A DNA stretch of 64,000 nucleotides from Marsupella aquatica (Eukaryota > Plantae > Marchantiophyta). The notes below the pieces were generated by a model. The model saw only the letters and a program-made list of their open reading frames with translations. It had not been told where the DNA came from and did no database searches. Each line of letters begins with the position of its first letter. Position 1 is the stretch's first letter. Positions 14,048-53,334 of this stretch are shown one piece after another. The translations under genes were made by a program, and so were the position numbers. Where the stretch lies: contig OZ316897.1 in NCBI GenBank assembly GCA_973895155.1, forward strand, positions 3,239,416 to 3,303,415, in the 5' to 3' direction.

Positions 14048-14610
14048 CCTGTGATCTCCACGCTGGCTCTAGACTTTTTTCAGTAATTCCAGATCCACAA
14101 CTCCTGATCGATCCCTCCACACAATCCGCCCTTTCGCCTTAAAGCTAGCAGATCTGAGCTTTCCGCCTCTCGAAGCTCCAGCAGCAGTCGCCAACTACTC
14201 CACAAGCACCATCTCTCAAAACTCATGAAATCTGCGCTTCTGCACTTCCATCTTCACCGAGCGTCCCTGCCTCCCCTCCTCCTCGTCCTGTTCCTCCTCT
14301 CACGCAGCCAGCAACTCAGCAGCCTTCCTTCCGTCCTGTGATGACGAATGCCGATCCACCTACCTGCTTCCTCCTCCTCCTCCCCCCTCTCGGTCCTCCC
14401 TGCTCGTGCTACCCCGGCATCGTCGCTGCGAGATATCGAGGAGCACAGAGGCCCGATCTGCGCCAAAAAACATTCTCTGTCCCGTTGCAGCCGGTGTGGT
14501 CTCTATGCGACAGGCAGCAACGACTGCTCGTGCGGATGTGCGATCCGCCAAACCACGGGCAAAATTGAAGAAGAGGACGACGACAGTTCGCACCAGGGAG
14601 TGGAATGGAA

Positions 14611-14634
14611 TGTGTGTCTGTGTGTGTGTGCATC

Positions 14635-14666
<32 letters not shown>
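14611..14666. repeat. Compound (TG)n/(AG)14 microsatellite in the presumed AP1G 5' region
   Basis: Read directly. On the minus strand it is a CT-rich tract of the kind common near plant TSS/5'UTRs. Confidence 0.85.
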
Positions 14667-14671
<5 letters not shown>

Positions 14672-14915
14672 AGTGTGGCGTCGATCGAGCACAAGGGATC
14701 GATCGTCGTCGTATGGGAGAGGAGAGGAGAGGAGAGAGACCGGACGACCCTACGGCACGAAGCTCGAGGAAGGGAAAGGCTCGACTTCTCTAGGCTCGGG
14801 CCTGGCCCAGGCCCGGTTGGGTCTGCGCTCTTGGCCGGGGGTATGAGTTTCGGACAAGCTCGTTCCGTCTGGCCTGGCCCCCTTCGGCCTCTCTTGAAAT
14901 ACCTCATGTTCGCCC

Positions 14916-15020
14916 GGCTCTCGCCTGGGCCCCTTTCGGTGCGTGGTCTTGGCTCTCGCCTGGGCCCCTTTCGGTGCGTGGTCTTGGCTCTTGCCTGGAC
15001 CCCTTTCCGTGCGTGGTCTC
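14916..15020. repeat. 3 x 35-bp GC-rich tandem repeat containing TGGGCC (site II-like) upstream of AP1G
   Basis: GGCTCTCGCCTGGGCCCCTTTCGGTGCGTGGTCTT at 14916, 14951 and (variant) 14986. Further GGCCC motifs occur at 14798-14880. Confidence 0.85.
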
Positions 15021-22723: not shown

Positions 22724-24494
22724 TTAGCGTACGGTTGCCGCCGTTCTGATTTTCCCGTACGGGAGGTCGTAAATCAGAGCTCTGATAATCTCGTCTTCAA
22801 GAAGGTCTTGCGCGTTCATCATGCTCGTGCCGTTGTTGCCTGCGAGACAACTTACTTCGCTAATCATAGGTACTGCGCTCACAGGGGCAGCAGCAGCAGC
22901 AGCAGCTGCAGGTATATCCATGTCGCAAGTCTGGGGTTCTGTCACAGCCTGTGACTCTTTGCGTCTAAATTGTGGTTTCTTACACTTAATTTTCGCTTGC
23001 AAGGGACCTGAAGCGTGTCCATCCCTCTTGCAGACGATGCGACAGATAACAGGAAAAGGTCGGGGTCTCCCTCCGCGCCGTAACACAACTCGCTCGGATT
23101 GGATATCCTCTGCAAGGCCGATTTCCTCCATGGTCCAAATTGACCACTTCCGGTCTCTTCTATTGCAGACCATATCTTTATTTGTTGACGCATCCACATT
23201 GGCGCCTGAGGCACTGGACAATTTTGGGGGAATGTTGCTACCATTTTTTAGCGCCACGTAACTCAAATAAGTTTTGTAAGCTACTGTTTGACCATTCTCA
23301 CGGATCGGGAATATACGGCCCTGCTGCTTCCATCGACACCCGTTTTCTGTTATTCGCAATCGCGTTGGTCGTTTCAAGCAGCTATACTTTGTAGCGCTGT
23401 AGAAGTAGTTCGTGCAGGCACCTGAGGATGGCAAATAGAATGAAGGCCTCGAGGTTAGTGTTAATTCTCTACAAAGCCTCCCACCATAATTATGCCTTGA
23501 AGATCTAAAGATTCTACAGTAGATAAACTGGTACTAAAGCAAACGACAGAATCTCGGGGGCTTCGTGGCAATTAAATTGAGTACTCTTTTGTTTCGTTTT
23601 TCGATCCCCGAATACAGATCTTCGAGATTCACATTTCTCTGACCTGTTTCCGCACCTGGAAGATGGCTAACCTCAGAGTTCTCGAAACAACCTACATATC
23701 CACACAGCTGATTCTAAATCACATGTCCTGGATTAATGAGTATTCTATTCTGCGTATAGAATATATGAAAATCGCGGTCGCAAATATGCGCTCCACTCGC
23801 GAAGAAGTAGAGTATCCTCGATCAGAGTGCTGGTTAGCTATTGAAGGCTTCTCTTAGATTCGATAGTCTGCAGAAAGAACTATTGCTATCGATATATATG
23901 AATGGACTACGACCTAGAAAACCTGTTACAAACTCTGGTTTAGACTGCCATTTGGAAGCAGAAAAAGTGAAAGATCGGTATGCTTTACCTTTGATCAGAT
24001 CCGCTGGATGTAGTGCATAGACATCGGCCTCCTTAATTGTAACAGGATGCGCGATGGAGTCTTGAGCGAGTTGTTTCCATCGGCGCAAAGATTGTACCAT
24101 TTCGATTTCTGCAAGTTTTAAGAACTTCGTTGGATTGACGTTCTTGCCATCACTTTTGGCATCTACAGCTTGTTTCCATTCCAATTTTTGGTTTTTGCTG
24201 TAAATCTTCTTCGGAATGCAGTGCGGCTGCTGCTGTTTTGCATTACAAGTAAGAAAACCAGTAGATTCCTCATTGACTCAGCTTAGACCATGGACTACGA
24301 GAGCAAATCACGGCGGTCATTATGCATAGTATCTATTTTAATATCAAAAGCTAAAGAAACAATTAGCACTAGTCAGCATGGCAGGGAACACCATTGGATA
24401 CCTTGAATAAATATTCATCCACCAAGAGGTTTTCTTCGAAGGGCTGTCCTTCCTCTTCGACTCTGAAAGCAATAATTCCAACTGGTTGAGTCAT
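22724..24494 (-). CDS. Divergent NAC (NAM/ATAF/CUC)-domain protein, ~344 aa; start and last exon uncertain
   Basis: Exons 24494-24402 (tentative), 24232-23989 and 23421-22724 are phase-consistent GT-AG. NAC-like subdomains occur in order: EIEMVQSLRRW, IKEADVYALHPADL, YFY..RLRITENGCRWKQQG, IRENGQTVAYKTYLSY, WTMEEIGL, VICRI. An alternative 3' splice 22733>22608 would end the protein at 22549. Confidence 0.7.
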
Positions 24495-37019: not shown

Positions 37020-38121
37020 TAACCAGGACATTATACTATTCAAACCCACACCCAACTCATAGTGCCACAATCGAAGGGGTGGTTTGTCTAGGGTGAGCTC
37101 ACCCACCCGGCTCTCCTCCTCTTTTAGCTCAACATTTTCATACCTTCCAAAATCGATTCCCTGCCGTTTCAATTGTAGTTTCTAGCGCAGCAGCAAACTG
37201 ACAGAACCATGGAGAAAACGCAAGTTCCTACTGCACAATCGAGCTTCTACTTCCACAACACATATCTTTGCATCATTTTGGTTGTTGGTTTTAATGAGGC
37301 AACAAGTGTAAAGTGAGCAAACTCTGTATGACCAAGGAGAAATTGCACTAAAGTAGCTCGATTGGTTGCATTCTTGGTCTTTTGTTATACTGTAGAACTA
37401 GAAGACTCATAAATCTGCTGCAATCTCCTAAATATGCAGCCTGAGCGTTCGAACCGTGTGGCCAGTCTGACGACCAATCAGGCTTTTGAAACGAGTCCCC
37501 TTGAATTTGGACAACTGAAGAATGTATACATATTGTCTTGACTGAGTGTCTATTTCCTGTGCCGCAAATATGGCAGGTAACTTTGAGGGTTTTAAAGATT
37601 ATTACTTTACAACCTACAAAGGTTCTGAGCACAATTTGATGCGTTTCATGATTATTATCCAAGATCCTTGGTGGAGTGTTATATGTCATATATATTTGGG
37701 TGAGTGTTACATCAGAACTGCAGTGAGTTTCCTTCCGTCTAGATTAATTTTTAAAGCTCACTCCTGTAGCAAGTTTGCTTAGTTTAATTCATGTTCTATG
37801 AATGTTCTGTGGCTTTTCTGCCATTTGAGAAATATCTTGATGGTTTTACACAAACATAGTTCTGAATTGAATTTGGCCTGGTAGATACAAAATTCATTGC
37901 AACTGCACCAAAAGCTGACAGTCAGAAACCCCCAGTTGAAAGATTGACGATCCCCAATTTTTTTGTCCATTAGAAAGCAAGGTACATCAAGAGGCTCGAC
38001 TCTTTGCTGTTTCTGAACCAGCAAACAAATAGAAATCTCGCTCAATCGAGGAAACTAACGAACCAGCAACAAGGTGTTGATGGACAAAAGCAGGCATTGG
38101 TTCACATTTTCGATGCGGCCT

Positions 38122-38760
38122 TCAATGGAAGTCGGCTCTGATAACTTCATCCTTCATTCCTAGTCCTAGAGCCTCAAGATGTGCACCATTCTCCATTTTT
38201 AGGCCAGGCAACAACAACGCTCTCGTGCCGATGAATGTATCGTCGCCAAGAAGGTTAGACTTGAACGCCACCTTTTCTCCCTCGTACAAATGGCCGAAGA
38301 GGAGAGTGTTGCGGCCGATAGCACTCCGCACTCCAACTCGGAGCTGATCAGGGTTCATGGCGTGGAGTGTGTCGATGTACACACTACTGTCCTCGATGGA
38401 AGCCCCCAAGCCTTGAAGATACCAAGTGCAGAAGGCAGACCCCTTGCCCAACTCCAGAAACGTGCTACCGATTGTCTGGTTGAGGACGTCCCATATGGTA
38501 TGGCGGAGGGTAGAGGCGCTCCACAATTCTTGAGTTTGGCCATCAGTGATTTTCCAAGATATGACCCATTTGCAAATTATGCCCAAGGTAGCACACAGAA
38601 GGCTTGTGCAGAAGTAGGCAACGGGGAGGAGCCCATACATCCACTGTTTGCCTGCATTGGCCCCTACAATCCCAAGAGCAAGAAGGGATGGATACAGGGA
38701 CAGAGTCAGGAACGCCATCGGTGTTACCACTTGCAAGATCGGTTGGACGAAACGTATGAA
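38122..38760 (-). other. Domain 7: third TM + LbH module
   Basis: Two hydrophobic stretches, then KWVISWKI..ELWS, GSAFCTWYLQGLGASIE, NPDQLRVG...IGRNTLLFGHLYEG, LGDDTFIGTRALLLPG. Confidence 0.8.
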
Positions 38761-41700
38761 AGACAGATCGCTAACTGGTCCTCCAGCTTGAGTCTTCATC
38801 GACCTGAGAATGCCTTTACTCTTGCCTTGTTGGTCAGCTGAAGCCAAGGCACCTTTCGACTTGTCAGTCTGATGATCGAGATGATCATTAACCAGCGGCT
38901 GACCGTGCTCGTGTAAGAGCTTAGAAGCTTGACTGCTTCCTATGACGGGACATCCTCCGGAGGACACCGTAGCTTGTTGATTCGCTTCATCTGGTCCTGA
39001 TGGGCGTGCTGTCGGCGCGAGATCATTGTTAAAGGATTTATGTACCAAGTCGTTCCACTGGGGTGGCAAGGGAGTGCCCGACCGCAAGTAGCCAAGGAGG
39101 TCATGCATAATCGATCTTCCCGTATCGACGGATGACGCTTGCATCGCACTGGTGCCACGAATCATCGCCAGGCTTGTAGGCCCGTGTTTGGGGTTGAAGT
39201 GAATGTCGTCAAATAACGTATCGTCGATGGACTCGTTGAAGGATAGTTCTGCAACATCGATGTATGGGTACAGCTTCTGGTCCCAGACCTTGGTTGGGTC
39301 TTCCACGCTCTCGCGCTCTTTGGGAGAGTCCGGGATAGGATGGAGCTGCAGCTGTAGAATGAACTTCACCCCCTCCGGTAACTCCAATCTCGTTTTGAAG
39401 TCATCTCTCAGGAAGCTCTTAGATCGTTTTGTCATCGTTTGAAGCTGGGTACATTCCACTAATGGGAGGCAATTCTCCTTCCGTGGGCTTCACAGCACCT
39501 GCATCCTCCCCAAAAGCAGTGTCGCTCGGGCGAATCTTGAACTTGACATACATCTTATCTGGTGTGGCTGAATTGGACGACGATGCGCTTGGCAGGGCCT
39601 GGAAGTGGCGAGCAGTGCAGCAGAAGTAATGCATTTCCGCATAGGAGTTTGGTTTCCTCAAATTTCCCCACTGACTGTGCCCCAAGGCCGGAAATTGCTT
39701 GATCCGCTCATCTCTCTCGGCTTCGGTCATGATGTAGTACCCCAGGAATTCGACCATGTTGCGCGCATGGAATATGGACCCCGTCTTCATGAAGAGGTCG
39801 AGGAGTGGCTTGTTAAGATCGTCCGGGGAGTCGGGTTGCAGAAGTCGTAGTGTTCCTCCTCTGACCTCCGTAGCCCTGTAGTCAAGGAAGAACATAATCA
39901 TCATGTCAATCTTTGTCACCAAAATGGTGCACGAGCAAAGGGAACGATTTCAGGTTTTAGCCACGAAAATAATTGCCGATTGTTTGGTGAGTACCTGTCA
40001 TCGTCCTTGGAGACACCGTTACTACAACGAAGGATAATGGGGTACTCCGCTCCGGGAGTGAGAATGTCATGCTTTGGAAATCCACTGGGAAGTTTGTCCA
40101 GCACACGCATAGTTCCTTTCCCAGCTGATCCGAGAAAATGGATGTAGCGCGCGTGGCCAGGTGGGGTCTTCTTCACGAACTCAGCAGCTACACTGGCAAT
40201 CATTTGCCGGAAACGTGGATCCAAATCTTTTGCTATAGTCACAAGTGGATGATCCTCGTCTTCCTCGCTCAGTTCATGTTGATCAATCTGCTCCCAAGAA
40301 ACAAGAAATCGGCTTAAGATTAGAAACTGGTTGGTTAGACACGTACCGGAGTATGCATTAATCCTATGCAATTCAAGATATAGAAAAGTCATCCAGATTT
40401 CGAGTATGATTTGTTAGCACTTGGGTTGAATGGGCTCATGCATTTATCCCTGTCAGACCAACGCGCGCAGTGGTTTGGCAATGATGCCTTATTACCTGAA
40501 TCATGGCTGGCAATAACTTAATCAACAAGTAAACTGGAGGCTCACCTTTAATCCGACGTGTTTTGAATTTTGTCCCTGGGCACCGGCAGATGAAGGCTGC
40601 TGCTGGAAAATCTTCTTCGGGGTCTTCACACCCACATACACTCCACCCTCCTCCAGAATCGCGCCAGTTGGGGCCACCGACATGGCTCCCAAGACTGCTC
40701 GGTGCTGTAGAGTGGCTCCAGGCATGACAACGCTTTGGGCCCCCACAACAGAGCGCGCGCCAATCCTCACAGCTCCTAGAGAAACTACGCCACCTGGACA
40801 TTTTTGGTACCACGGCTTCTTCAGGAGATTTATCAAAATGATGGAGATTGGAGCACAGGCAGTGTCAGAAAGCTCCTAGGCATCAGATTTGGATCTACAT
40901 CAATTGTCCGTTAAATCCAGGAAGAAGCCTTGTTTATTTGAATTACAGGAAGATCATCACCACCGGCTGAACAACTGAAATGTAGAACAAACCTGGCAAA
41001 TATTGCGAAGTGATGATCTTGGAAAAGTCTCCCATATGGCACTCTTCTCCGAGATCGAGAAGGTCAGGGTCGACAAGAGCATTCAATCTACGAATGGAGG
41101 CCATTCGACCCACGTTGGCACCCAGGCTGCGCAAGTACACGCACAGAACTTCTGTGCCCATAAGTAGCACCATGAACTTCTCGTGTGCCGATCTCAACAA
41201 AGAATGGACCAACCATAAGCGATATTGGCAACCTTCGCTGTGACTACTGCTCGCAAGCATGGATCCTTCTTGTAACCTGCGTCGATTGATATAAATCAAG
41301 TTAGTCATTCCGATAATCATTCGGATAATTGTTACCTACGCAAAGTTCCACACGATTATGGATGTTGACGCACCAGACTAAAGTTTTCATCCACTACAGA
41401 CTGTTGAAATGTCGTCAAATGAAGGAAACGCCACCAACTCAACAGCCCTTCAAGTTTGAACTCTCTTCAAGTAATAGGCTCTCAAAGGTTCAGTGCTTCC
41501 TTCTGGATAGTTCATTAATCAGCTGGAGATACATGTTTTGGTAACCCTGGTTGTGTCCTGCTGTAACTCCGAGTTTCAAATGGCTTAGTAGCTCTCGTCG
41601 CACTGATTCCAGTGTCTTGAAATCTGGGCGGAATGGAAAATCAAGGAGTAGTTCGTGTAATGAAGTAGTTTTTGAGAATAAGATTTGCAAGCTTAATTAA

Positions 41701-44700
41701 GGATACTGATGTGCCCTATGTTTATCTGATAAATTTCGCGAAGTGTAGCTCTCGAAGATGGTCACGCTGTATCTCTTGATTGTTAAGTTTGTTTGTCAGG
41801 CTAGAAGATAGTGCTAACCTATCCCTTGGGATTGGTCTCTGCAATGGATAAGGCTTTTGAGTATTTTATTTTAGCATAGTTTCTTTTCTTTGTAAATTTT
41901 TGATGGGTCTATGTATTCATACCACCACTCCTGTTCTTTGGTTTTGGTTGGCCCTCTATGGACCTCTTTCACCTTTGGTTCTTAAAGTTTAGTTTCGCCC
42001 TCTCCTGTCTTCTTGTTTAAACCTTTGTTATTTCTCTTCAATTTATAGGATACTTAAAACTCAATTTGTATTACCTGCCAATGAGTGACCACTTGAGGAC
42101 ACCAGTTAAAACTGCAAGACTAGCTCCATATACCGCATACGCAACTCCAGAAATGGAAAGAAACACCATCACGTTCCTTTCCCGAGCAACATGCAGCAGG
42201 AGGTTTACAAGCAGGGCTGGATCCGGATACATCATGAGTGGAGCCAAGATCATCAGATACTTTGGGAAAGTTAATAAGAGAGGGAACACGACATATCCCA
42301 AATGTGCTGATTTCATTACTGCTTTCCTCAACGAAATGTCAGTCACTACTTCCGCTTGGGCTGCGAGCCATTGGAAAGTCGTGTATGCCACCAGAGCTGA
42401 GATGGTCGAGACCAGCCCAACCAGATAAATCCCACTCAGCTGCGCAATAAGCATTGTAAGAGCAGGCGACGTATAGTGCTTCACCTGCAATCCAACAGTG
42501 AACACCCCCTCTGTTCAATAAGAATTGAGCCAATATCATTTCAATCATTTAAACTGTAACATCCTGGCTTGTAAATTGTTAATTGACTGATCGGTTACTT
42601 TCTTTCTTCGCGGCAACTAACAAGTTCAACAATATATGTCAAAACTCTTTGTATGATAAACAAGAAATCCAATGCAGGAGAATTATTGTAATTTGGAATT
42701 TTGTTTGGATACCTGTTCCCCTTGTCCTGGGCTTGCGAACAGACGTTCCCCGACATCAGTTTTACCCAAGGCACTGATTCTGGAACCAGCATCCAAGATA
42801 CTACCTCTTTGGACAACAGCATGGGGGCCCACCACGCACCCTCTACCAATTCTTATACTTTGGAAGGTAACCAACCCTGAATTCACCTCGTGGCTTTGGA
42901 TGGTGGCCCCTTCGCCTATCACGGCTCCACTGCCCACCGATAGCAAAGCTGGGTCGGTTATATCGACAGAATCCAGGACCACAGATTCATCGATTTCGGC
43001 TCCAAGAGAGCGATACCAGTATGACAGAAACACTGTGCCTCTCAAATATACAGCAAGGCTATTGGAGGCGAAGTCCTGGAGCCGGTAGAGAGTCCACCAT
43101 CTCACGTAGCTCAAGGACCAGAGTGGGATCGCAGAGGGTTGGGACTTGTGGTTCATAGGAAGCAGCACTCTTGCCCCAAACGACGAGATTACGAATCCTA
43201 CAGCGCCAATGTAGAGAATCCACGCAAGAGGCACCAGAATCGCGGAGAGGAGAACAATGCTTGGGAGATTGTTCTTCAGCTGGTCATTCGGAGCTATCAC
43301 CTCGATGAGCTTTTCATAGATGTAAACGGCTGGGGCTATAAGTAAAGCTCCCATATAGAGTATACCCAAAATCTGCACGTTGAGATGAACGGTTGAATTG
43401 GTCATCTACCCGGAATTTATTTGACTTTTGATACAAATCATTCTCGAGAACAAGGTTAGTAGCAAATGTGATTAGGTACCTTACAGAATTCACTATCAAA
43501 CTGTTGCAATTTTTTGGAAATACATCCTCGGTAGAAAGTCGTTCTTTGTATTTTGATTGTGATGCGAAGATCATGCATGCAAAGGCTGGTTTACCTGTAG
43601 CGCTGTGATTGCTATCTTCCTCTTTCGCGACGGGTCCAGTGCATCTGCTAGCTGCGCCTCGGATATTTCTTCAACTTCCTCTTCATACTCCACTCTATAA
43701 GTACTGGTCAACGGCTGTTCGATTCCACTCAAACCTTGTTTGCTTGTACTCGTCACGAGACGTCTTGCCGTAGCAGGGTTGGAAGATCGCAAACTACCGG
43801 CACTAGCTGATTCTTCCTTCCCATCCACTCTCGAATCTAGTTTTTTCACAACGTCCTCACAGAAGTCTGCCAGTTCTGGGATACATCCCGTGGTATAGAT
43901 CTGAATCGCAGAAATATGAGTTCCCAAAAACTCTGACAGCTTCGAAGCTGCAGCCACAGTCCCTTGTGAATCAATGCTGTAGTTTTCAAAACTCTCAGTT
44001 ATGTTGATTCGGGATCCGGATAGGCCTGTCATCTCCGCCACTAACTGGATCAAAAAACTTGTGATCTGTTCCTTGGTCTTTGTGCGGGTGCTTGCAACCG
44101 CCTGCAGACGTTGTCCGTTTGTTAGATAAAAATGAGAGAAGTACTAGAGTCTGAGTACTTATCGCGGCATTTCCTATCGTTGTCAATCAACAACATAAAC
44201 TTTGTCAAAGCCATATCTAGATAATTATATACAACGTTCACGTCAGAATGTTTGTACTCAAAGGGCTCTAGTGGCGAAGCTAAGCAACATGTACACTTCT
44301 CGATCTTCGGATCGTCCGGAACACTATTCTCGAGAAAACCAGGATCATCCCTTTACCTGGCTTGGAGAGTGATATGAGCTTCCAGGGGTAATTTGAGTGC
44401 GCCGACGACGAAGACTAGAGTGGGCGCGTATTATAGAGAGATTGGCTGAACCCTTCACCGAAGAGAGAGTCCCTTCGGAAAATCTCTTCAAGCACTCAAG
44501 CCTTCGAATCTTCCCACTGGTTGTCTTAGGAATAGTGCGCGGTTTGATGAGATTAACGAACGCGACTTGAAGTCCGTGTTGCTCAGAAACAACAGCTTTG
44601 ACGTGCGATACAAGGTCGTCAACGGCAAGTTTACGCATCTTCTTTTCGTCTCTCACTTCTACTACGACGACAATCCCGTCTTTCTCGGACGTTATGACCC

Positions 44701-47700
44701 CTTTAGATTGCAAGACTCTCGCTGGCGCGCTGAATGCTGCACAGCAACCTGAGCAGGCGAGCACACGTCAGAGGGATCTAGCCATGGACTTGAACTGCAA
44801 ACTCGAGAATCACACTTAAGATTTGATCTCTGCAAAGCTGCAGTTGCAATTCACATTCCTGTACGTAGACAACGGTGAGAAGACCGAACATGTCATACTG
44901 CTCCTATTTCATACGGAAGAGGAAAAGTTTCACGCACCCGGTTTGACGGAATTGGAGCAGTTCTCCACAGTTTTCTCAAAATCGGAAGGATAATAATTCC
45001 TGCCATTGACTATAATGAGGTCCTTGATCCGCCCAGTGACGAACAAGTTTCCCTCGATCACCCGTCCCAGGTCTCCAGATCTTACGAACAAGATGTCTGC
45101 ATCTTCACTCGAGCAACCATTCAGCTGCGCGCGGAACGTCTCCTTCGTCGCTTCTGGCATGTCCCAATAGCCCACGCCATTGCTGGGGCTACTAAGCCAT
45201 ATTTCCCCTTCCACTCCATCACCCACCTCCTCCAGAGTATCGGGGTTTACAATTCTCACGTCAGAGGCTGAGTCTTGCCAGTCTTCTGCCAGTTTCCTGC
45301 ACATTTCGGAGGAAAGGAGAATCGAAGATCATTACTGCCTGAGATACATTCCTGACCATTGTATGAATTTGTAGAGCTTCCTCCGTGCCAATTTGTTGAC
45401 ATCATTCTACTGTCTAGCAATCACTTTATATAGCTGATACAGCTGTTCAACCAATGGATGGATTGCTCATAACTTCTATAAACTATCGAAAACGCATATT
45501 TGTCGTGTTGTGTGTTCGGTAGACCTTTACGTACGATTCTTATATCAACAAAAAGCTGAGAACAAGACTGTTCTAAGAATAAAGACTTATTGATCTAGCT
45601 TGGTGACTATAAATTTTGGTTCGAGTATCCTGTTCCACATTCCTTTCGATGATTGATCAGCCATAAATCGTCTCTTCAAAAAATAAACATGCATTTCATA
45701 TTCTTATGGCTTTCGTTCTTGGACTATTTTTCACTAAAACAATGTCCTGTATTGAAAAGGAGAACAAGAAAGAGTTCCGTAGTCTCGGACAAGAATGAAC
45801 AGTATCTATTACGGGTAACAGTCAAGTTTCTGGCCACAGAAAGGACATCGGAACTAGAAGTATATAAGGAGCATAGTTTCATCGGATGGGTTGGATGCAT
45901 GGTTTCTGTGACGCACGCAGAGTGAGGATTCGTGCCAGCACGAACGCCCTTCGTCCCTCGGGATTTGTCCGTGTATCCACAACCCACTCTTCCGTCAGAA
46001 TCCATCAACATAGGCCTGTTCCGTCCGAACGCACAGCAGATGAAGACACAGTTCTCCGCCATCCCAAATCCCGGGGCGAAGATTTCCTCCCTCACTCCTG
46101 CGTCCCAGAAGGTCTCTACGAACCCTCGCATTGTTTTCGAGCAAATGGGTTCCGCGCCCACCATCAGGAAGCGCAACGACGAGAGATCTAGAGGCTTCGC
46201 ACGGCCGCTCGCCTTGAGCATCTCGTAGCGTTTAAGCACTAGCTCAAATCCAAAATTAGGTGCCGCTGTGTGTGTCGCCTTGTACTTTTCCACCTGCACA
46301 TGTCATCATAACACATTAATCAACATTGACAACCTCTGGTGAAAATCATTGTACTTTCACACTGAACTATCATTGCACTTTCAATCTGATGATGAAGTTA
46401 GACAATCAATTGAATCAAGTGCTACAAATCATTAGCGCTCACATCGAATGACTCACTATTTCGAGCCACATCATGGGCTTGCGAATGAAAGTGATGGGAG
46501 AGTATATAATGAGGGAACCGCCTGTCACCAAGCTGACGAGCAGGCCGCCGATGAGCCCCATGTCGTGATACTGAGGAAGCCAAGACACCACCACCGCGCG
46601 TGATGTGCTCTTGTAGGCTGCGCGCATGGACTTGGTATTGTGGACTAGAGCTCCGTGGGTTATCATCACTCCCTTGGCGTGTCCGGTGGATCCAGATGTG
46701 AACTGCAGGAAGCACACGTCGTTTAAATCCGGCTGAGGAGCTCCGGATGCACCATATGCGTAGCTATTGACTTCGCTCGTGCTCCCACTCGTGCTTCTCC
46801 GATTCAATTTCAGGACCACTGTATCGTCATCATCAGCCGTTTCCTCTTCTGAACTATTTCCTTGCTCTGCAGATAGACGAACATCGTATGTCACGTTCTC
46901 GTCGCAAGTTGAAGAAGGTAAGTATGCTATTTGGTGTCATGGATTTCTTTGAAGTTTTTCTAGCCAAAAGTTTAGCTAACAAAAATAATTTATCTGTCCA
47001 ACGTGACTTGAAGAGAGCCCTTTATGAGTAACTCACCAGATGGACTTCCACTCCTGGTTTGCAGATCGCGCGGGGCTGTTGGCTGACTGCCAGCCCATAC
47101 AGTATACATGTTTAGTCCCAAGGATGCCGCGGCCAGTTTAGTCGCCGCCTTCTGGACTAGTGAGGTCCATGGGAGGGAAGCCGCGCGTGGGGTTGAAATC
47201 CGAGAACGGGAGTCATTTAAGCAATTGCTATAAATCCATGGCAAATCCGGCCATTTCAGCTTTGCAGACCTCGAAAATGAGACGGAGTTTGCGGCCCGAA
47301 CCACAGAATGATATGCGCGTGTGCTTATGATGGCTCTAGACTTGGTGATCTTCGCCACATTTATAAGTTTCTCTAGAGCCTGATCCCCTCCTTTTTTGGT
47401 CGGATCCGGTGGAATCAATGGCACGGCTAGAATCTGCACAATTCAGACAGAGCTAAAGCTAAGTCAACGTACTAGCTAGAGAGTCACTAAACGGTGCGTG
47501 GTAGAAAATCTACTGCTAAGCTTTTGAAAAATCAATGTGCATCTGATATCGATAAAAAAACTCGAGGATTTTCCAATATGAAGTATGCATATCAATTTGA
47601 TGAAGTGGAATGAAGATGTTCAGACGTACACGGGCTCTTAAGCAGGCAAGAAAAGCTTCGATGAATTCAAGTCCAGGTGGGTGCAACAGCACTACACGGT

Positions 47701-50700
47701 CACCAGGTCGCAGAGCAGGTTTCTTGCTTGTCAGCAGATGATGAGCTATGATAGAGGTTCGCGTTTCCAGCTGCGAAAATGTCAGTTTGTAGGACTCTTT
47801 CCCCTCGTTGTCCAGCCATGTGTACACCAATCGGTCCTTGGTTACTGGGTGGTTCGCGTAATAGGAGAGGTACGCGTCCACTGTGGGCAAATCTGGGAAC
47901 TCCACGCCTGGCAACTCAGTGAGATCATTCGGCTGGTAGTTTAAAATCTCTTCTGCTCCGTTCGACAGAAGATACTCCACCAGCCTCTGCATATGGTATA
48001 AAGAAATTTGTTAGACCTTCTACTCAATCCATTCGTGTTCAGAACCCGAACAAAGTTGAAGCATCATGTATAACACCTCTTCCACGAACGTTGCTTAAAC
48101 AACCTTCGGTGACATTGCTGTAAAAGTGATTGCGAATGATATGTGAGACTTGAAAGATTCATTCAATGGCATACTTTAACAACGATGGGTTCGGTGATGG
48201 AGCCAAAACACTTTTTCATCAGTCCCGTCGAATAGGTAGTGTTCCGCTCCGTCAATTCAAATGCCATCAATGCCCCCGTGAAGTAGGTGTTGTTCTTTCC
48301 TTGCAACTCTTCTAGCTTGTCATAGAAACCCGCTTTCATATCTGCAAGATCTCCGAGCGATGTCGACTGTGTTAGATTTTCGGGTCCTTCGAATTACAGA
48401 TGTCCTTTTGTATCCAACGTCGACATTAAAAATTTGCCGCATGCATCGTCGATATTTTAGGGAAGGAAGTGAAGTTTCGAAATCAAAAACTCTGAGCAAT
48501 ATGGTAATGTCTGTGCAACGTACAAACGAGCTGTCCACATGCCATCCTTGGATCCTTACAACAATCACGTCATGCAACTGAACGTCTGAACAAATCCAAA
48601 TTATCCGTAACGCACGGGGTATGATTCTTGGTTAGTGTCGTGAATAAAACCCACGACTGGCTTGACACTTTCTGCTCACGCGTTTAATTCGCAAGACACC
48701 ACGGCCGGAGTATTCCCTTCATTATGCTACAGTCCCAATGCAAGTTGATATACAATAACTGCGTATCGACCAACACTCCAATCAATATTTCCATCGAAAC
48801 CTCAGCAAGAACAAGCGGACGCTTTGGAGTTTACGTAAGAGGAAATAGATTACCGTTCGAATAGCGTAGACTTCGTTCGGTCTACTCAATCCATTCGGTA
48901 AAGTAAACTAAAAAGCAGATATGTAGCCGAAATTCATTCAAGAGGTTAAATTATAGATTATTGGAGGGATTCGTACGTAGCTTTTCCTCTAGGAACCCAA
49001 ATCACCAAACCAACCCGTGGCGAGTCAGCAACGAATCTGGTGGGTGAGAGGGATGTGGTAGCTGGGCTATAGGATTCATAACTCTACGGCGCGCCTGCTA
49101 GCAAACGCCCCCAAACAGATCATCACTCTTCATTAACGTCAAGCAGATGGATTCTGTCCATCGATCCCACAGCTTCATTAACGTCAAGCAGATCTGTCCA
49201 TGGATCCCACAGCAAGGACGACAATATACACAGAAGAAACATTGACTAAAATCTGCGGGTAGGTACGCACCTGGACTGCGAATGTGAGGGAAATAACGCC
49301 ACTTCCGCTGCAGAATCAAGGTCTCGACGCGCCCGCCCATCTTCTCTACATCTTCATAGAGAAGTTCGGTCACTCGCCGCTGATGCACTTCGGCGGTTCC
49401 GAAAGACCAGAACAGGAATATGTCCGTGTTGGCGTAGAAGCGTTGCATCGCCACAAAGCGCCCCATACTGGCTGGATCGTCCGCGTGCTCGGGGTAGTAG
49501 AACACGGCGGGGATGTCAAGCCCGCTGATCCTAAGTACAGTTGTGTAGTAGTCGATCGTTTCGACCCTTGAGAAGAGCTCTAGCTCCTCTTTCGAATAAT
49601 CGAGTATGCCACTCAGATTCTGAATCTCTGCATACATATACACCAAAGCTGGTGTGAAAAACGAATTCATATACTGTTACCAATATCCAGACTGGATACC
49701 AGCTAACCTGGCCACTGTAGCTGGTAATCAGGCTACATATAATTTGCAAGATGAAAGAGAGATTTGTTGGCTTGCATAAATCATGACGAATTACAAAAAG
49801 ATCATGAGTTGGGAATTGGAACGACCGCGTTGCAAAAACAATGTACTCTACAGTTAAGAGCTGTGCACGTACAATCCAGTCTGCCCAAAATCCAAATCCA
49901 GTCTAGCTAGAAGTTCGCAAACGTGAATTTGTATTTTACGAGTATGGGATATACAGAGAGATTCGTAGATACCAGGCTTCGAAGCGTCGGAAGATCGGTA
50001 AATTCGGTTCCCTTTAGGAATGGAAACACTACCAGACATTATAAGCTTGTCAAACTCAAGCGTCAGATTCTTCTGCAGCTCGGCTGCATTATCTGGGGAC
50101 GTGTTCGTTGAGGTGGAATCGATCACAGAAATTTGGACCACGTTTCCAGTTCTTTGAATGCCTTGGACCTGCACATTGCAACGCACATCTGGCAGCAAAT
50201 TGGCCACCTTCTCCCAGAAACTGCTGTATCCGCCCTTGACCCTCCATGCCTGACCCAAAGAAGAGCGCACAAACTCATGTATGTAAGCGTAAGGCATATC
50301 TTGCGGGTAGCCATAGCCTGATGCTGTAAACAACGCCGCCACAGCTCTAGGAACTCCCTTTCCAGAGCCGTGAGACTTCAAATACTCTGGGGCAAGCTCA
50401 TGGGCTAAACTGCTGACGGCATGTACTCCGAGTTTCCCTGATCCGTTGGCCTGGGCCTGAGTGTCAGTACACAGCAATGACAAGGCTAATCAATATAATG
50501 CATGAACAAAAACGTACTTTCTTTCTGAGATTATTAGTTGATTACAGGGTCCTTCAAACAAGATGTACTCCCGGAAGGCGTACAAGGCGTACGGCCCCAT
50601 GTTGCTTGATACATCAAATTCGAGACTGAAAATTATTTTCAGTATCGAAACCAAGGCGGATATGCATACAGATTCAAAGTAAGAAAGTCTGGACCATTGA

Positions 50701-52176
50701 AAAGCACCTGTAACTTGGAAGTAACCGGTAACAACGCTAAACAATCCGCAACAATTTTCATTTCCTCCATCTTCCCAGTATCGCAATCGATTCTGGACAT
50801 GGTGTGATGACCCATCTCTTCCAGCTCCACGCCCAACTGATCCATGATTGAGATTACGGTGGGAGAGCTTTCTCTCGCGATGACCTGTCCACCCAAATCA
50901 TAAACTCGGCCTGCATGCATGCAAACATAAGCCTTGACTCGTGAGACTAATATATTTCTTAATCCTTCAGTGGAATTTTGCATAAAGAAACGTACTGTGT
51001 TAGCAAGGCCATTAAAAATGCAAAAACCGGGCTACCAACGAGAAACTGCAGGAGTTCAAATCGTTGGCTAGGTAACGATTAAGATAGAACAGCGAACAAA
51101 CTGAAGTACCGAACAACATTGAGAATCTTCCATATATCCGATTATTTTTTTACCATTTAAAATAGATTGCGAATCTCCTTTTAGATATCTCCTATCCATT
51201 AGGACATATATGGGTAAGTAAGGTAGGCGAACGAGTCTGCGAGCTTCTACGCCAATCTCAACGTTCGTAGACTCACTTGACAACTCACGATGGATAGACA
51301 CAAGTGCTGCACAGGTCCATTACTCTGCATGTACAGTACTTGTTTCACAGTAGAACTGTATATCAGACATAACTGTGATTTGGAGGGAGTGTTCAGTGTT
51401 AGCAATTCTTCAAATGATGGACTACGGCAGGTTGGAAGGGATCGTCCAATTCAATGCAACAAGAGTCCTGTGTACGTGAAGATGTGGTCTTACAACGTGC
51501 AGATTGATTACGCACTCTGGGGCAGCCCATCAACCCATGCCAGTTTGTGGTGATCTTTCAAATTATTAGAATTCGACCAAATCCGTAAAGCTCTGGCAGA
51601 AGCTTAGATGAGATGTTCAACAACCACCGAAATTCGGAGAGTACAATTTATCGACCGTCTCTCTAAGTAGGTTTTGCACGTTGTGGATGAGTCCAGGGAG
51701 GGCGAGGGATACTAAATCGCTCCACTGAAGGTGCTCTTCAAGTCTAGTAAAGTTTTCCATCACGCGGGACACAATCGCAAGGACCAGTCCATTTTGGCAG
51801 CTGTTCGTTGGTTCCAGTTTTACCCTCTTAGTGTCATTTAGATGAAATTTGGATAAGCCTGTAAATTATTTCCGGGTAGTCAGTCGAAACGTTCAATGGA
51901 GGAGTGTTCAATGGGTAGAACGTTGCATATGATATCACCTAAACCCCCGTACGTAGGGAGAGAAGAGTGGATTGTACCTTCGATGAGCTCAGAGCCACAC
52001 ATGCCGCCGACTTTGTTGTGCTGCTCGAGCACCGTGACATTGTTGTAGCCCAACTTCACGAGTTGGTAGGCCGCCGACAGTCCGCTCGGCCCACCTCCAA
52101 CCACGGCGATGCGAGTGCTCAGCTTCACTGCGGGATACAGCTCCTCCCGTTGATTGCTGCGTGCCGCGAAATCCAT
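38122..52176 (-). CDS. NRPS-like lipid megasynthase: PAI-like flavoenzyme + FAAL + ACP + Pls-type TM/LbH modules with an embedded catalase-like domain; 18 exons, ~2618 aa if the 1-nt frameshift at 39427-39430 is corrected
   Basis: Exons: 52176-51978, 50910-50708, 50456-49973, 49627-49271, 48341-48175, 47986-47630, 47433-47037, 46866-46457, 46293-45917, 45296-44938, 44748-44357, 44101-43595, 43372-42713, 42484-42075, 41276-40993, 40793-40546, 40287-39995, 39875-38122. All 17 introns are GT-AG and phase-consistent, so the domains form one reading frame. The total of 7858 nt is one base off frame, localised to the last exon. Confidence 0.9.
39050..40287 (-). other. Domain 6: catalase-related (allene oxide synthase/short-catalase-like) heme domain
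   Basis: ARYIHFLGSAGKG (distal His), YPIILRCSN, EVRGGTLRL, DLFMKTG..F, YVKFKIRP, FLRDDF..RL, KFILQLQL, DPTKVWD...PYIDVAEL, FNP, GRSIMH. Confidence 0.8.
40546..43372 (-). other. Domains 4-5: two transmembrane + left-handed beta-helix (hexapeptide) modules, Pls/NRPS-terminal-domain-like
   Basis: Hydrophobic helices are followed by PLWSLSYVRWW..LRGTVFLSYWYRSLGAEID..LLSVGSGAVIGEGATIQSH..IRIGRGCVVG. The second module has LMGTEVLCVYLRSLGANVG..DPDLLDLGEECHMG..VRIGARSVVGAQSVVMPG. Confidence 0.8.
43845..44075 (-). other. Domain 3: phosphopantetheine-binding carrier (ACP/T) domain
   Basis: ITSFLIQLVAEMTG..INITESFENYSIDSQGTVAAASKLSEFLG..ISAIQIY...IPELADF. The spacing is ACP-like, with the (G)xDS Ser. 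Confidence 0.8.
44357..47986 (-). other. Domain 2: fatty acyl-AMP ligase (FAAL)-type adenylation domain
   Basis: LQFTSGSTGHAKGV, SWLPQYHDMGLIG, APNFGF, PGFGMAEN, GEIW..SPS.G.GYW, RSGDLG, GRIKDLIIVNGRNYYP.DFE, IPKTTSGKIRR. Confidence 0.92.
48175..52176 (-). other. Domain 1: FAD-binding amine-oxidase-fold domain, PUFA isomerase (PAI)-like
   Basis: RIAVVGGGPSGLSAAYQL..VTVLEQHNKVGGMC..EGRVYDLGGQ, GYGY, VKGGYSSFWEKV, and C-terminal WRYFPH...AGFYDKLEELQGKNNTYFTGALMAFE. This matches my recollection of the Cutibacterium acnes PAI termini. Confidence 0.75.
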
Positions 52177-52323
52177 GGCCCGAAGATGCTGCAGTACGCC
52201 CTTCGAGCCCTGTCTACCATACAAAAAACAGCAATCTACAACTACGCTGCAAACTAGCGTCTTAATAATGCATGCCTGACATGCCCAATGCAGAGAAATG
52301 CAGATGGAGCAAGAGCGCCTTAG

Positions 52324-52333
52324 TATATATATA
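52324..52333 (-). promoter_or_regulatory. TATA-like (TA)5 element ~150 bp upstream of the megasynthase ATG
   Basis: TATATATATA in a plausible position. The TSS is unknown. Confidence 0.3.
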
Positions 52334-53334
52334 CACATATCCAGAGAATTGTGAACAACGAGTTCTCACGAGAGTGTAGCTCTAAACTATACGGAGCAGC
52401 TGCCTATACAGCAGCCATCGTTCACCCGATCAGACTTCACCCACTGGCTGCGCAGCCTCAACTATGCAAAGGGAAGCTGCGATTTGCCCATTTTATTCGT
52501 TTGCTACACGCATACTAAATCATATAGGGGCATGTCTATGAGGAAACACTTTCCCCCTCTGTCATTGCTCGGCAGGCAGGTATCCAGTCAGACTGGTACT
52601 GTGCTTGATCGACTTATTACTTTCATCCGGGGCAAATCCAGCAAAGATAGTAACACTTAGCCACTAAAGAGATGTTCTTATTGACAATAGTGCCAATTTG
52701 TTTTGTATATTTATAAATATGCCTATAAATTTGTCAAGGTTTTGTATGTGAATGATAAAAATATTGACAATATTGTAAATTCAACATATCTTTGGTGACA
52801 ATGTACTTATTGGTGACAATGCACTTCCAAATTTAGAACATAAACTAAGAAAACAACAGGCAAAGATAGTAAATGGCATTTGCTTGGTTGTTCCCCCTTG
52901 ATTGGTATGTTGTCAGAGGACTATTCATAGAGTTACAATAGACCAACCAGATCATCTTCACATAATTATATCAAGGTGTCAAAGAACCAAAAAAAGCCAA
53001 CCCTAGACTCAAGATCCCAAAGGCAGGGAAACCATAATCTAAGACAAGGAAATCATAAATCATAATTACATGTTCTTTGTAGTTTCCTCGTTTGTTTTAT
53101 TATCATCATAGTGTGCGGTACTGCGGTAGCGATAAAATGATACTTGGAATATAATGACAAACAAGACAAAACCTCTTTTTGCTAACACGTTGGTGTCAAT
53201 ATGAGTGTTATTTGTGTAAGTTGATGCCAAAAATAGCTACGTGGATCGGTGGAAACCTTGCATGAGTGCTACAAATAAGCTGACACCATTCTCTAGAAAC
53301 AATTAATTAGTTTGTGTACCTTTAGTTGTTCTTA

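What the first reader, a model, noticed from the sequence alone, without database searches (positions are those of the whole stretch)
38122..52176. Single-gene plant lipid assembly line: isomerase-like flavoenzyme, FAAL, ACP and a Pls-type membrane ligase with an embedded catalase/AOS-like domain
Seen: 18 phase-consistent exons join fragments that look like separate ORFs into one ~2618-aa protein with seven modules. Known: FAALs load fatty acids onto carrier domains without CoA. PAI-type flavoenzymes conjugate PUFA double bonds. Short catalase-related hemoproteins (coral and cyanobacterial allene oxide synthases) transform fatty-acid hydroperoxides. An A-T unit followed by three TM-separated C-terminal modules is the layout of epsilon-poly-L-lysine synthetase. 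Inference: this is a self-contained, membrane-anchored system that activates, tailors and then transfers or polymerises a fatty acid, for example to an oxylipin conjugate, estolide or surface polyester. Plants are generally regarded as lacking canonical NRPS lines. I recall similar ~2300-aa proteins in other land plants annotated only as uncharacterised or 'FadD-like', so the architecture is probably not unique. I know of no assigned function.
Basis: partly seen in the sequence, partly recalled or inferred. Interest (0 to 1): 0.93.

Follow-up and report, generated by a model that had tools for sequence, protein, structure and literature searches.

The report
Plant fatty-acid megasynthase, function unknown
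This is one very large liverwort gene that fuses a fatty-acid-activating enzyme, a carrier domain, two lipid-oxidising or isomerising domains and a membrane-bound coupling domain of the type bacteria use to make poly-lysine; the family runs from liverworts to eucalypts, nobody knows what it makes, and this copy has a one-base frameshift.

Summary
Guided by the closest relatives (Calypogeia fissa, 67-94% identity per exon), the minus strand from 52176 to 38122 gives 18 exons, all with GT..AG introns. Domain searches on single exons and on full-length orthologues give this order: PAI-like flavoenzyme, FAAL, ACP, then a Pls/PosA-type membrane domain of three TM/beta-helix modules. A coral-AOS-like catalase domain sits between modules 2 and 3.

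Caveats:
- This copy has one extra base in an A4 run (39427-39430) that breaks the frame. One contig from a related organism lacks that base.
- No RNA data exist for this organism. In Eucalyptus, two independent 7.2-kb contigs carry all domains in one uninterrupted ORF.

New here:
- The FAAL, catalase-like, PAI-like and ACP set recurs in bacteria as a soluble cassette ending in a thioesterase or reductase. In at least two loci it lies next to PUFA-synthase genes.
- The plant catalase-like domains form one clade nested among those bacterial fusions.
- Liverwort copies have His where other members have the haem-ligating Tyr.

The architecture (HemY-FAAL-catalase) was already noted in eLife 2021 with function unknown. 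First readers of this scan flagged the same stretch before. The proposed mechanism is inferred, not shown: load an unsaturated fatty acid, tailor it oxidatively, then transfer it at the membrane.

The parts
38122..52176 (-). Whole gene: 18 exons, ATG at 52176, stop at 38122, 2618 codons if one base of the A4 run is skipped
48175..52176 (-). Exons 1-5: FAD flavoenzyme of the PAI (P. acnes polyunsaturated fatty acid isomerase) type. The GxGxxG motif starts near 52098.
44357..47986 (-). Exons 6-11: fatty acyl-AMP ligase (FAAL) with a DIP2-like C-terminal subdomain. Motifs A3, A5, A7 and A8 are intact.
43595..44101 (-). Exon 12: acyl carrier domain (PP-binding) followed by a low-complexity linker. 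The attachment Ser lies in the motif IDS, codon 43967-43969.
42713..43372 (-). Exon 13: Pls/PosA module 1, with two TM-like segments then a hexapeptide beta-helix (TIGR02353 positions 11-182)
42075..42484 (-). Exon 14: hydrophobic stretch with 3-4 TM-like segments between modules 1 and 2. It has no family hit.
40546..41276 (-). Exons 15-16: Pls/PosA module 2 (TIGR02353 positions 287-448)
39045..40287 (-). Exon 17 and the 5' part of exon 18: catalase-related haem domain of the coral-AOS type. The distal His is kept. Residue T66 of coral AOS is Ile here, N137 is Lys, and the proximal RxxxY reads R-S-I-M-H.
39427..39430 (-). A4 run with one base too many: a +1 frameshift, followed by an in-frame TAA at 39419-39421
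38122..38760 (-). 3' part of exon 18: two TM-like segments and beta-helix module 3 (TIGR02353 positions 484-686)

Best explanation
This is a liverwort orthologue of Marchantia MpACOS18. That gene belongs to a land-plant family of ~2300-2600-aa single-polypeptide, NRPS-like fatty-acid synthetases.

Shown:
- The order of the parts is PAI-like flavoenzyme, FAAL, ACP, then a Pls/PosA-type membrane domain with three TM-pair/beta-helix modules. A coral-AOS-like haem domain is inserted before the last TM pair.
- The same four soluble parts occur in bacteria as a FAAL / catalase-like - flavoenzyme - ACP - TE (or R) cassette.

Inferred mechanism:
1. The FAAL adenylates a long-chain, probably polyunsaturated, fatty acid and loads it on the fused ACP without CoA.
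2. The flavoenzyme attacks a bis-allylic position, as PAI does. Together with the haem domain it converts the chain into a conjugated or oxygenated (hydroperoxide-derived) acyl group. The flavoenzyme thus plays the part that lipoxygenase plays in catalase-LOX fusions.
3. The Pls-type membrane domain stands where the bacterial cassettes have a thioesterase or reductase. It off-loads the chain by transfer to an amine or hydroxyl acceptor at the membrane, possibly repeatedly.

This copy carries a one-base frameshift. Unless that is an assembly error, it cuts the protein within the haem domain.
For: Architecture. Gene model and colinearity with full-length orthologues. Catalytic motifs and ACP Ser intact.

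One mRNA in a relative: two Eucalyptus contigs from different SRA runs each carry one 6.9-kb ORF holding all domains.

Functional linkage of the parts:
- Each of the three catalytic domains of MpACOS18 matches the corresponding domain of the cyanobacterial, myxobacterial and Streptomyces fusions over its full length (27-37% identity, E 1e-28 to 1e-95).
- Of the non-plant proteins found through the catalase-like piece, nearly all are CAT-AO fusions and one is CAT-LOX.
- Plant catalase-like domains form one clade (100/100) inside a group of bacterial CAT-AO fusions (92/98).

PUFA link: a PfaC-like subunit plus PPTase lies directly upstream in Streptomyces, and a FabA+acyltransferase Pfa3-like gene plus PPTase lies in another locus.

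Off-loading role: the bacterial cassettes end in TE or thioester reductase at the position where the plant proteins have the Pls-type domain.
Against: No substrate, product or activity is known for any member, plant or bacterial.

The haem site is atypical. N137 is Lys in all plant members, T66 is Phe or Ile, and the proximal Tyr is His in liverworts. AOS-type chemistry, or even haem binding, is therefore uncertain here.

TIGR02353 scores are far below the family cut-off: 216 bits for MpACOS18, and about 190 summed over this window's exons, against 423.

Only 2 of 8 bacterial loci examined show PUFA-synthase genes.

Selaginella RefSeq models split the gene, with the flavoenzyme alone as a 456-aa protein.

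There are no RNA data for this organism, and this copy is frameshifted.
Confidence: 0.5

Rival explanations
1. The gene and parts are the same, but the redox pair works differently. The flavoenzyme is an O2-dependent oxidase or desaturase that releases H2O2. The catalase-like domain either removes that H2O2 or uses it as a peroxygenase to hydroxylate or epoxidise the tethered chain. No fatty-acid hydroperoxide or allene oxide is involved.
For: Thr66 of coral AOS suppresses reaction with H2O2 (from the literature on that enzyme, recalled). That position is Phe or Ile in plants, closer to the Val of true catalases. Amine-oxidase-fold flavoenzymes commonly make H2O2. Some bacterial cassettes add P450s, that is, further oxygenation chemistry.
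Against: The best solved relative of the flavoenzyme is an isomerase that does not consume O2 (2b9w). The catalase-like domain is closest to AOS (1u5u), not to true catalases. The distal Asn needed for catalase turnover is Lys.
Confidence: 0.2
2. In this genome the locus is a recent pseudogene or null allele. The extra A is real, translation stops at 39419-39421, and the product lacks half of the haem domain, the last TM pair and module 3.
For: The frameshift is in the window and in run X1. A4 is a short run that is rarely miscalled. Run X4, from another study, shows no deletion at depth 227. Calypogeia fissa has two paralogues, so redundancy is possible.
Against: X1 is probably the source of the assembly, so it is not independent. 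X2 does not cover the place. A contig from related organism B (X3) lacks the base and restores the frame. The 436 codons downstream are open and 75-80% identical to Calypogeia. The three listed A-versus-B differences in module 3 are all synonymous.
Confidence: 0.45
3. The domains are made as two or more separate proteins (flavoenzyme; FAAL-ACP-membrane part) from neighbouring genes. The single 2618-aa model would then be an artefact of homology-guided joining.
For: RefSeq splits the Selaginella locus into a 456-aa flavoenzyme and a 1049-aa FAAL-ACP-Pls protein. The Cryptomeria RefSeq model (1858 aa) lacks the flavoenzyme. There is no RNA for this organism.
Against: All 17 introns are phase-consistent with consensus sites and no stop. 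Full-length models exist in Marchantia (two species), Riccia, Calypogeia, Eucalyptus, Dillenia and Cryptomeria (GLJ23286.1). Eucalyptus contigs from two runs carry one ORF with all domains. The junction 48175/47986 between flavoenzyme and FAAL is a 188-nt intron, not an intergenic gap.
Confidence: 0.1

Closest known systems
Epsilon-poly-L-lysine synthetase Pls and the Pls/PosA family (TIGR02353)
   Same: An adenylation domain and a carrier domain are followed by three hexapeptide beta-helix modules, each preceded by a pair of TM helices. There is no canonical C or TE domain. TIGR02353 matches all three modules.
   Different: The loading domain is a FAAL, not an amino-acid A domain; the non-plant Pls-like hits examined all have amino-acid A domains. 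A flavoenzyme is added at the N-terminus and a haem domain is inserted between modules 2 and 3. Scores are below the family cut-off. The acceptor and product are unknown.
Coral allene oxide synthase, the catalase-related domain of the AOS-lipoxygenase fusion (PDB 1u5u, 3dy5)
   Same: It is the best and only solved relative of the haem domain, at E 6e-21 over 57-360 of 374 residues for MpACOS18. The distal His and the Arg of RxxxY are kept.
   Different: The partner is a PAI-like flavoenzyme, not a lipoxygenase. T66 is Ile or Phe and N137 is Lys. In liverworts, including this gene, the proximal Tyr is His.
Propionibacterium acnes polyunsaturated fatty acid isomerase PAI (PDB 2b9w)
   Same: There is full-length similarity of the N-terminal domain (19-456 against 5-422, E 4.7e-27). 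It is the only PDB hit below 1e-5 for the Selaginella domain.
   Different: PAI is a free-standing enzyme acting on free linoleate. Here the domain is fused to FAAL and ACP. Identity is low, and the substrate-entrance residues could not be compared because that stretch did not align.
Bacterial FAAL - catalase-like - amine-oxidase-like - ACP - TE/R proteins, for example Coleofasciculus WP_190428476.1, Polyangiaceae MCU0655709.1 and Streptomyces WP_172387093.1 (all uncharacterised, annotated 'FAD-dependent oxidoreductase')
   Same: They hold the same four soluble parts, each homologous over its full length. The plant haem domains nest among them in the tree.
   Different: The domain order differs. 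The bacterial proteins are soluble and release the product through a thioesterase or reductase instead of a Pls-type membrane domain.
Plant orthologues: MpACOS18 (Marchantia polymorpha BBN01803.1), Calypogeia fissa 'unnamed protein product', Eucalyptus LOC104421554, Selaginella EFJ28539.1
   Same: They have the same architecture and are colinear. Identity is 41-75% (Marchantia) and 67-94% (Calypogeia) per exon.
   Different: This copy has the frameshift. Vascular-plant members keep the proximal Tyr and some have two ACPs.

Membership tests
Pls/PosA-type NRPS-like synthetase | Adenylation domain followed by a carrier domain with the phosphopantetheine Ser | tested here: met
   AMP-binding and PP-binding hits on exons; motif IDS present. 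The adenylation domain is of the FAAL class, not an amino-acid A domain.
Pls/PosA-type NRPS-like synthetase | Three tandem beta-helix (acetyltransferase-like) modules, each preceded by TM helices | tested here: met
   TIGR02353 positions 11-182, 287-448 and 484-686 fall in separate exons. Kyte-Doolittle TM-like segments lie in exons 13, 14 and 18.
Pls/PosA-type NRPS-like synthetase | Score at or above the TIGR02353 cut-off (423 bits) | tested here: not met
   MpACOS18 scores 216.5 bits. This window's exons score 82.7, 36.3, 20.4 and 53.1 bits. A bacterial Pls-like protein scores 600 bits.
Pls/PosA-type NRPS-like synthetase | Iterative amide-bond formation giving a homopoly-amino acid | not testable with these tools
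   This needs biochemistry. The FAAL loading domain makes an amino-acid polymer unlikely.
Fatty acyl-AMP ligase (FAAL) | Closest to FAAL families and structures rather than to acyl-CoA ligases, with a DIP2-like C-terminal subdomain | tested here: met
   The top NCBIfam hits are fatty-acid--AMP ligase or FadD32 families for 4 of the 5 FAAL exon pieces that matched; for 46442-46936 and 45727-46302 the top model is named long-chain-fatty-acid--CoA ligase (PRK07768), followed by FAAL families. PDB 7r7e and FadD32 are best for MpACOS18. PF23024 hits are present.
Fatty acyl-AMP ligase (FAAL) | FAAL-specific insertion and blocked CoA pocket | not tested
   Patil et al. 2021 report these features for plant FAAL-like domains in general. 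I did not map them on this sequence.
Catalase-related allene oxide synthase (coral AOS type) | Catalase-core similarity with the distal His | tested here: met
   1u5u is the only solved match of the exon pieces. His aligns with H67.
Catalase-related allene oxide synthase (coral AOS type) | Proximal Tyr ligand in RxxxY | tested here: not met
   The window reads R-S-I-M-H, as do Marchantia and P0001. Vascular-plant and bacterial relatives keep Tyr.
Catalase-related allene oxide synthase (coral AOS type) | Thr66 beside the distal His, and Asn137 | tested here: not met
   These positions are Ile and Lys in the window, and Phe or Ile and Lys in all plant members.
PAI-type polyunsaturated fatty acid isomerase | FAD Rossmann motif and full-length similarity to 2b9w | tested here: met
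   GxGxxG lies in exon 1. 2b9w scores E 4.7e-27 (MpACOS18) and 2e-27 (Selaginella domain). For the window itself only exon 4 reaches it, at E 0.006.
PAI-type polyunsaturated fatty acid isomerase | Isomerase activity on a 1,4-diene | not testable with these tools
   This needs an enzyme assay.

The most novel reading that the evidence does not exclude
The family is a lipoxygenase-independent oxylipin machine. A PAI-like flavoenzyme makes the peroxide or carbocation intermediate on a carrier-bound polyunsaturated chain, and the catalase-related haem domain rearranges it. The Pls-type membrane domain then couples the oxygenated acyl groups to one another or to an acceptor. The result would be an extracellular or membrane-associated lipid polymer or conjugate (estolide or polyester-like) that arose early in land plants from a bacterial PUFA-tailoring cassette.
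Probability: 0.12. Interest if true: 0.9.

Novelty: new variant of a known kind. Interest (0 to 1): 0.62.

Why it matters
Plants are not thought to use NRPS-type assembly lines. Yet this megasynthase has been kept from liverworts to lycophytes, ferns, conifers and several eudicot and monocot lineages, and no product is known. Recognising the C-terminal part as a Pls-type membrane coupling domain gives concrete, testable chemistry. So does recognising the three soluble enzymes as a cassette that bacteria place beside PUFA synthases. The bacterial cassette is soluble and may be easier to express and assay than the plant membrane protein. If the flavoenzyme and haem pair turns out to replace lipoxygenase plus AOS, that would be a new route to oxylipins.

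Tried and rejected
RNA evidence. The look-up of sequencing runs found only DNA-type holders, so splicing could not be checked in this organism. Read laying was used on the frameshift instead.

Single-exon searches against solved structures. Exons 2 and 3 of the flavoenzyme, and the middle catalase exon, gave nothing significant. The domain-level assignments therefore rest on the orthologues plus exon-level identity to them.

Literature. No paper mentions MpACOS18. None links catalase-related, PAI-type and FAAL domains. None describes a plant Pls-like enzyme or the bacterial cassette beside PUFA synthases.

Neighbouring genes. There is no sign of a gene cluster. I found an Adaptin_N exon and a weak NAM-like ORF, and nothing else had a Pfam hit.

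The first gene model, guided by Marchantia, gave 2538 aa with three uncertain junctions. I replaced it with the Calypogeia-guided model.

The PAI carboxylate-binding residues could not be compared because that stretch did not align.

Joined step left out. The full spliced protein was never assembled or sent to any search or fold tool. Exons were searched by reference, one at a time. Only up to 45 codons on each side of a candidate junction were joined inside a script to score splice sites. No structure prediction was run.
Full report
**1. What is in the sequence**

On the minus strand between 52176 and 38122 lies a row of open segments. Taken one at a time, they match the following.
- An FAD Rossmann fold (NAD_binding_8, Amino_oxidase) at 51880-52338.
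- AMP-binding in four segments, plus the DIP2-like C-terminal subdomain.
- PP-binding at 43571-44053.
- Hexapep at 42683-43405.
- A weak Catalase hit in the last, 445-codon segment.

NCBIfam on the same exons ranks fatty-acid--AMP ligase or FadD32 families first for 4 of the 5 adenylation pieces that matched. For the other two a model named long-chain-fatty-acid--CoA ligase (PRK07768) ranks just above the FAAL families. It also finds TIGR02353 (Pls/PosA) in four exons. Model positions 11-182, 287-399, 394-448 and 484-686 appear in that order.

**2. Gene model**

The last exon, searched against 1.84 billion representatives, found full-length plant proteins.
- Marchantia MpACOS18, 2465 aa.
- Selaginella, 2385 and 2439 aa.
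- Cryptomeria, 2453 aa.
- Eucalyptus, about 2313 aa.
- Adiantum, 2178 aa.

A second search added Marchantia paleacea, Riccia fluitans, Dillenia and two Calypogeia fissa proteins of 2592 and 2613 aa.

tblastn of these onto the window is colinear from 52176 to 38125. Identity is 41-75% per exon for Marchantia and 67-94% for Calypogeia. The source is therefore a leafy liverwort close to, but not identical with, C. fissa.

Scoring all GT/AG pairs around each gap against the Calypogeia protein gives the following.
- 18 exons and 17 introns of 119-1067 nt, all GT..AG.
- No stop codon inside any exon.
- ATG at 52176 and stop at 38122.
- 7858 nt in total.

An earlier model guided by the more distant Marchantia protein was shorter and ambiguous at three junctions.

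The whole spliced protein was never assembled or sent to a search or fold tool. Exons were searched by reference.

**3. The frameshift**

The frame changes between 39431 and 39426, with no room for an intron. The minus strand reads gac-aaaa-cga. With three A's the translation continues as in the relatives (...PASNDDK RSKSFLRDDF... against Calypogeia-like ...PASPDDT RSKSCVRDDF...).

Contigs of four public runs were laid on 38101-44000.
- X1 is identical to the window and is probably its source.
- X2 (same organism) does not cover the place.
- X3 (a related organism) has one contig with exactly one letter left out at 39427. That restores the frame.
- X4 (the related organism, another sample) shows no deletion and has a contig that breaks at 39422.

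Whether the extra base is an error or a real null allele stays open. I put it slightly below even odds that it is real.

Downstream, 436 codons stay open and are 75-80% identical to Calypogeia. The three listed differences between the two organisms inside module 3 are all synonymous.

**4. The parts in detail**

Flavoenzyme. MpACOS18 residues 19-456 match PDB 2b9w, the P. acnes polyunsaturated fatty acid isomerase, over its whole length (E 4.7e-27). The next amine oxidases match only the Rossmann part. For the Selaginella N-terminal domain, 2b9w is the only hit below 1e-5. Of the window's own exons, only exon 4 reaches 2b9w (E 0.006, the sole hit).

FAAL. The best solved relatives are FAALs (7r7e, FadD32, FadD23, FadD28). 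Motifs A3, A5, A7 and A8 are intact.

ACP. The Ser is present in the motif IDS.

Membrane part. There are two TM-like segments at the start of exon 13 and three or four in exon 14. Two more lie before the last beta-helix. This is the Pls layout of TM pairs ahead of each soluble module. No solved structure of that part of Pls exists in the PDB copy; only the A domain (7wew) is there.

Haem domain. MpACOS18 residues 1847-2162 match coral AOS 1u5u at E 6e-21. The window's last exon matches 1u5u residues 247-360 at E 6.8e-6. The domain sits between TIGR02353 positions 448 and 484, that is, after module 2 and before the last TM pair. By analogy with Pls topology it should face the same side as the ACP.

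The key residues, relative to coral AOS, are these.
- The distal His is conserved everywhere.
- T66 is Ile in liverworts and Phe in vascular plants.
- N137 is Lys in all plant members.
- The proximal RxxxY is kept in Selaginella, Cryptomeria, Eucalyptus and Dioscorea.
- It reads RxxxH in this gene, in Marchantia and in a third liverwort-like sequence.

The Tyr-to-His change is thus a lineage feature, not damage to this copy.

**5. The bacterial counterpart**

The catalase-like piece also found non-plant proteins. Pfam, source names and pairwise BLAST show their architecture to be FAAL - catalase-like - amine-oxidase-like - ACP - thioesterase. Examples come from Coleofasciculus and Trichocoleus (2007-2009 aa) and from Polyangiaceae (1703-1726 aa). 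Other variants have these features.
- A terminal thioester reductase.
- The FAAL encoded as a separate adjacent gene (Streptomyces and others).
- A fused P450.

Each catalytic domain of MpACOS18 aligns with its bacterial counterpart over the full domain (27-37% identity, E 1e-28 to 1e-95).

Of the non-plant proteins holding a near-complete catalase-like domain, nearly all are CAT-AO fusions. Only one is a catalase-lipoxygenase fusion.

In a maximum-likelihood tree of the catalase-like domain, the nine plant sequences form one clade (100/100). Its inner branching follows plant phylogeny, and it lies inside a group of bacterial CAT-AO fusions (92/98). The tree is unrooted.

Gene neighbourhoods are as follows.
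- In Streptomyces sp. MNP-20 the order is PfaC-like PUFA-synthase subunit, PPTase, FAAL, then CAT-AO-ACP-TE.
- In a metagenomic contig a FabA+acyltransferase (Pfa3-like) gene and a PPTase flank the fusion.
- Other loci show a PKS dehydratase, P450s or nothing telling.
- The non-plant Pls-like proteins that match the C-terminal part carry ordinary amino-acid A domains.

The combination of a FAAL with a Pls-type domain was seen only in plants.

**6. Mechanism**

Shown: the parts, their order and their conservation; their co-occurrence as one polypeptide in plants and as a cassette in bacteria; and the intact catalytic motifs.

Inferred:
- The FAAL loads an unsaturated fatty acid on the ACP.
- The flavoenzyme and the haem domain act as a pair on that chain. 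The catalase-related domain stands directly before the flavoenzyme in the bacterial fusions, just as it stands before lipoxygenase in coral and cyanobacterial fusions. This suggests that the flavoenzyme supplies what lipoxygenase supplies there.
- The Pls-type domain replaces the TE or R as the release step and transfers the acyl group to a nucleophile at the membrane.

The main variant is an oxidase plus peroxygenase or catalase pair. The unusual haem site, and its His form in liverworts, is unexplained.

**7. What is known**

Patil et al. [quoted passage not shown] Their 'HemY' is the flavoenzyme.

The FAALPred paper (PMC12820801) found FAALs in 20 of 130 Viridiplantae genomes, all classed NRPS-like.

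In the texts I could search, neither mentions the Pls-type membrane domain, the PAI or AOS affinities, or the bacterial cassette. No paper names MpACOS18. First readers of this scan had already flagged this same stretch and its sub-features. Their claims on the RxxxH site, the Lys, the frameshift and the insertion point were all checked here and hold.

**8. Verdict**

The domain reading is correct. The family is real, old and uncharacterised, but its odd architecture is not unreported. This copy may be a null allele. Mechanism and product remain hypotheses, and they now have a tractable bacterial model.

Noticed in passing
window 39422 (run X4): A contig of run X4 matches the window down to 39422, three bases from the frameshift-induced stop. 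It then continues with 30 unrelated letters. This could be a structural variant, a paralogue junction or a contig artefact at the same place as the frameshift.
   Followed up: partly
window 41453-41516: Contigs of the related organism (X3, X4) show a 64-nt 'goes back' joint inside the 798-nt intron. This is a tandem-duplication length difference between the two organisms.
   Followed up: no
window 11936-12355 (-): This exon has a strong Adaptin_N hit (E 3e-26). An AP-complex subunit gene lies upstream on the same strand.
   Followed up: no
window 22727-23533 (-): A 269-codon open segment has a weak NAM (NAC transcription factor) hit, E 0.007, below the cut-off.
   Followed up: no
window 14150-15200: This is a G+C-rich island (0.53 against about 0.42 around it). 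Long open segments overlap on both strands in several frames and have no Pfam hit, so it is probably a repeat or low-complexity block.
   Followed up: no
P0156/P0157 (Selaginella RefSeq) against P0004 (JGI model): RefSeq splits the Selaginella locus into a 456-aa flavoenzyme and a 1049-aa FAAL-ACP-Pls protein, while the older model is one 2385-aa protein. This is either an annotation artefact or real separate expression in that species.
   Followed up: partly
P0019 (Logan contig, 1248 aa): This bacterial-type relative has two catalase-like domains in tandem ahead of the flavoenzyme and ACP.
   Followed up: no
L004 1-13558 (Streptomyces sp. MNP-20); L005 375-19288: An uncharacterised FAAL / catalase-like-flavoenzyme-ACP-TE cassette lies directly beside PUFA-synthase-type genes and a PPTase. 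It looks like an undescribed PUFA-tailoring gene cluster.
   Followed up: partly
P0013 (Perilla frutescens KAH6812933.1), P0012 (Salix purpurea): Fragments of the family are annotated 'HXXXD-type acyl-transferase family protein' and 'AMINE OXIDASE'. These names are misleading and hide the family in databases.
   Followed up: no
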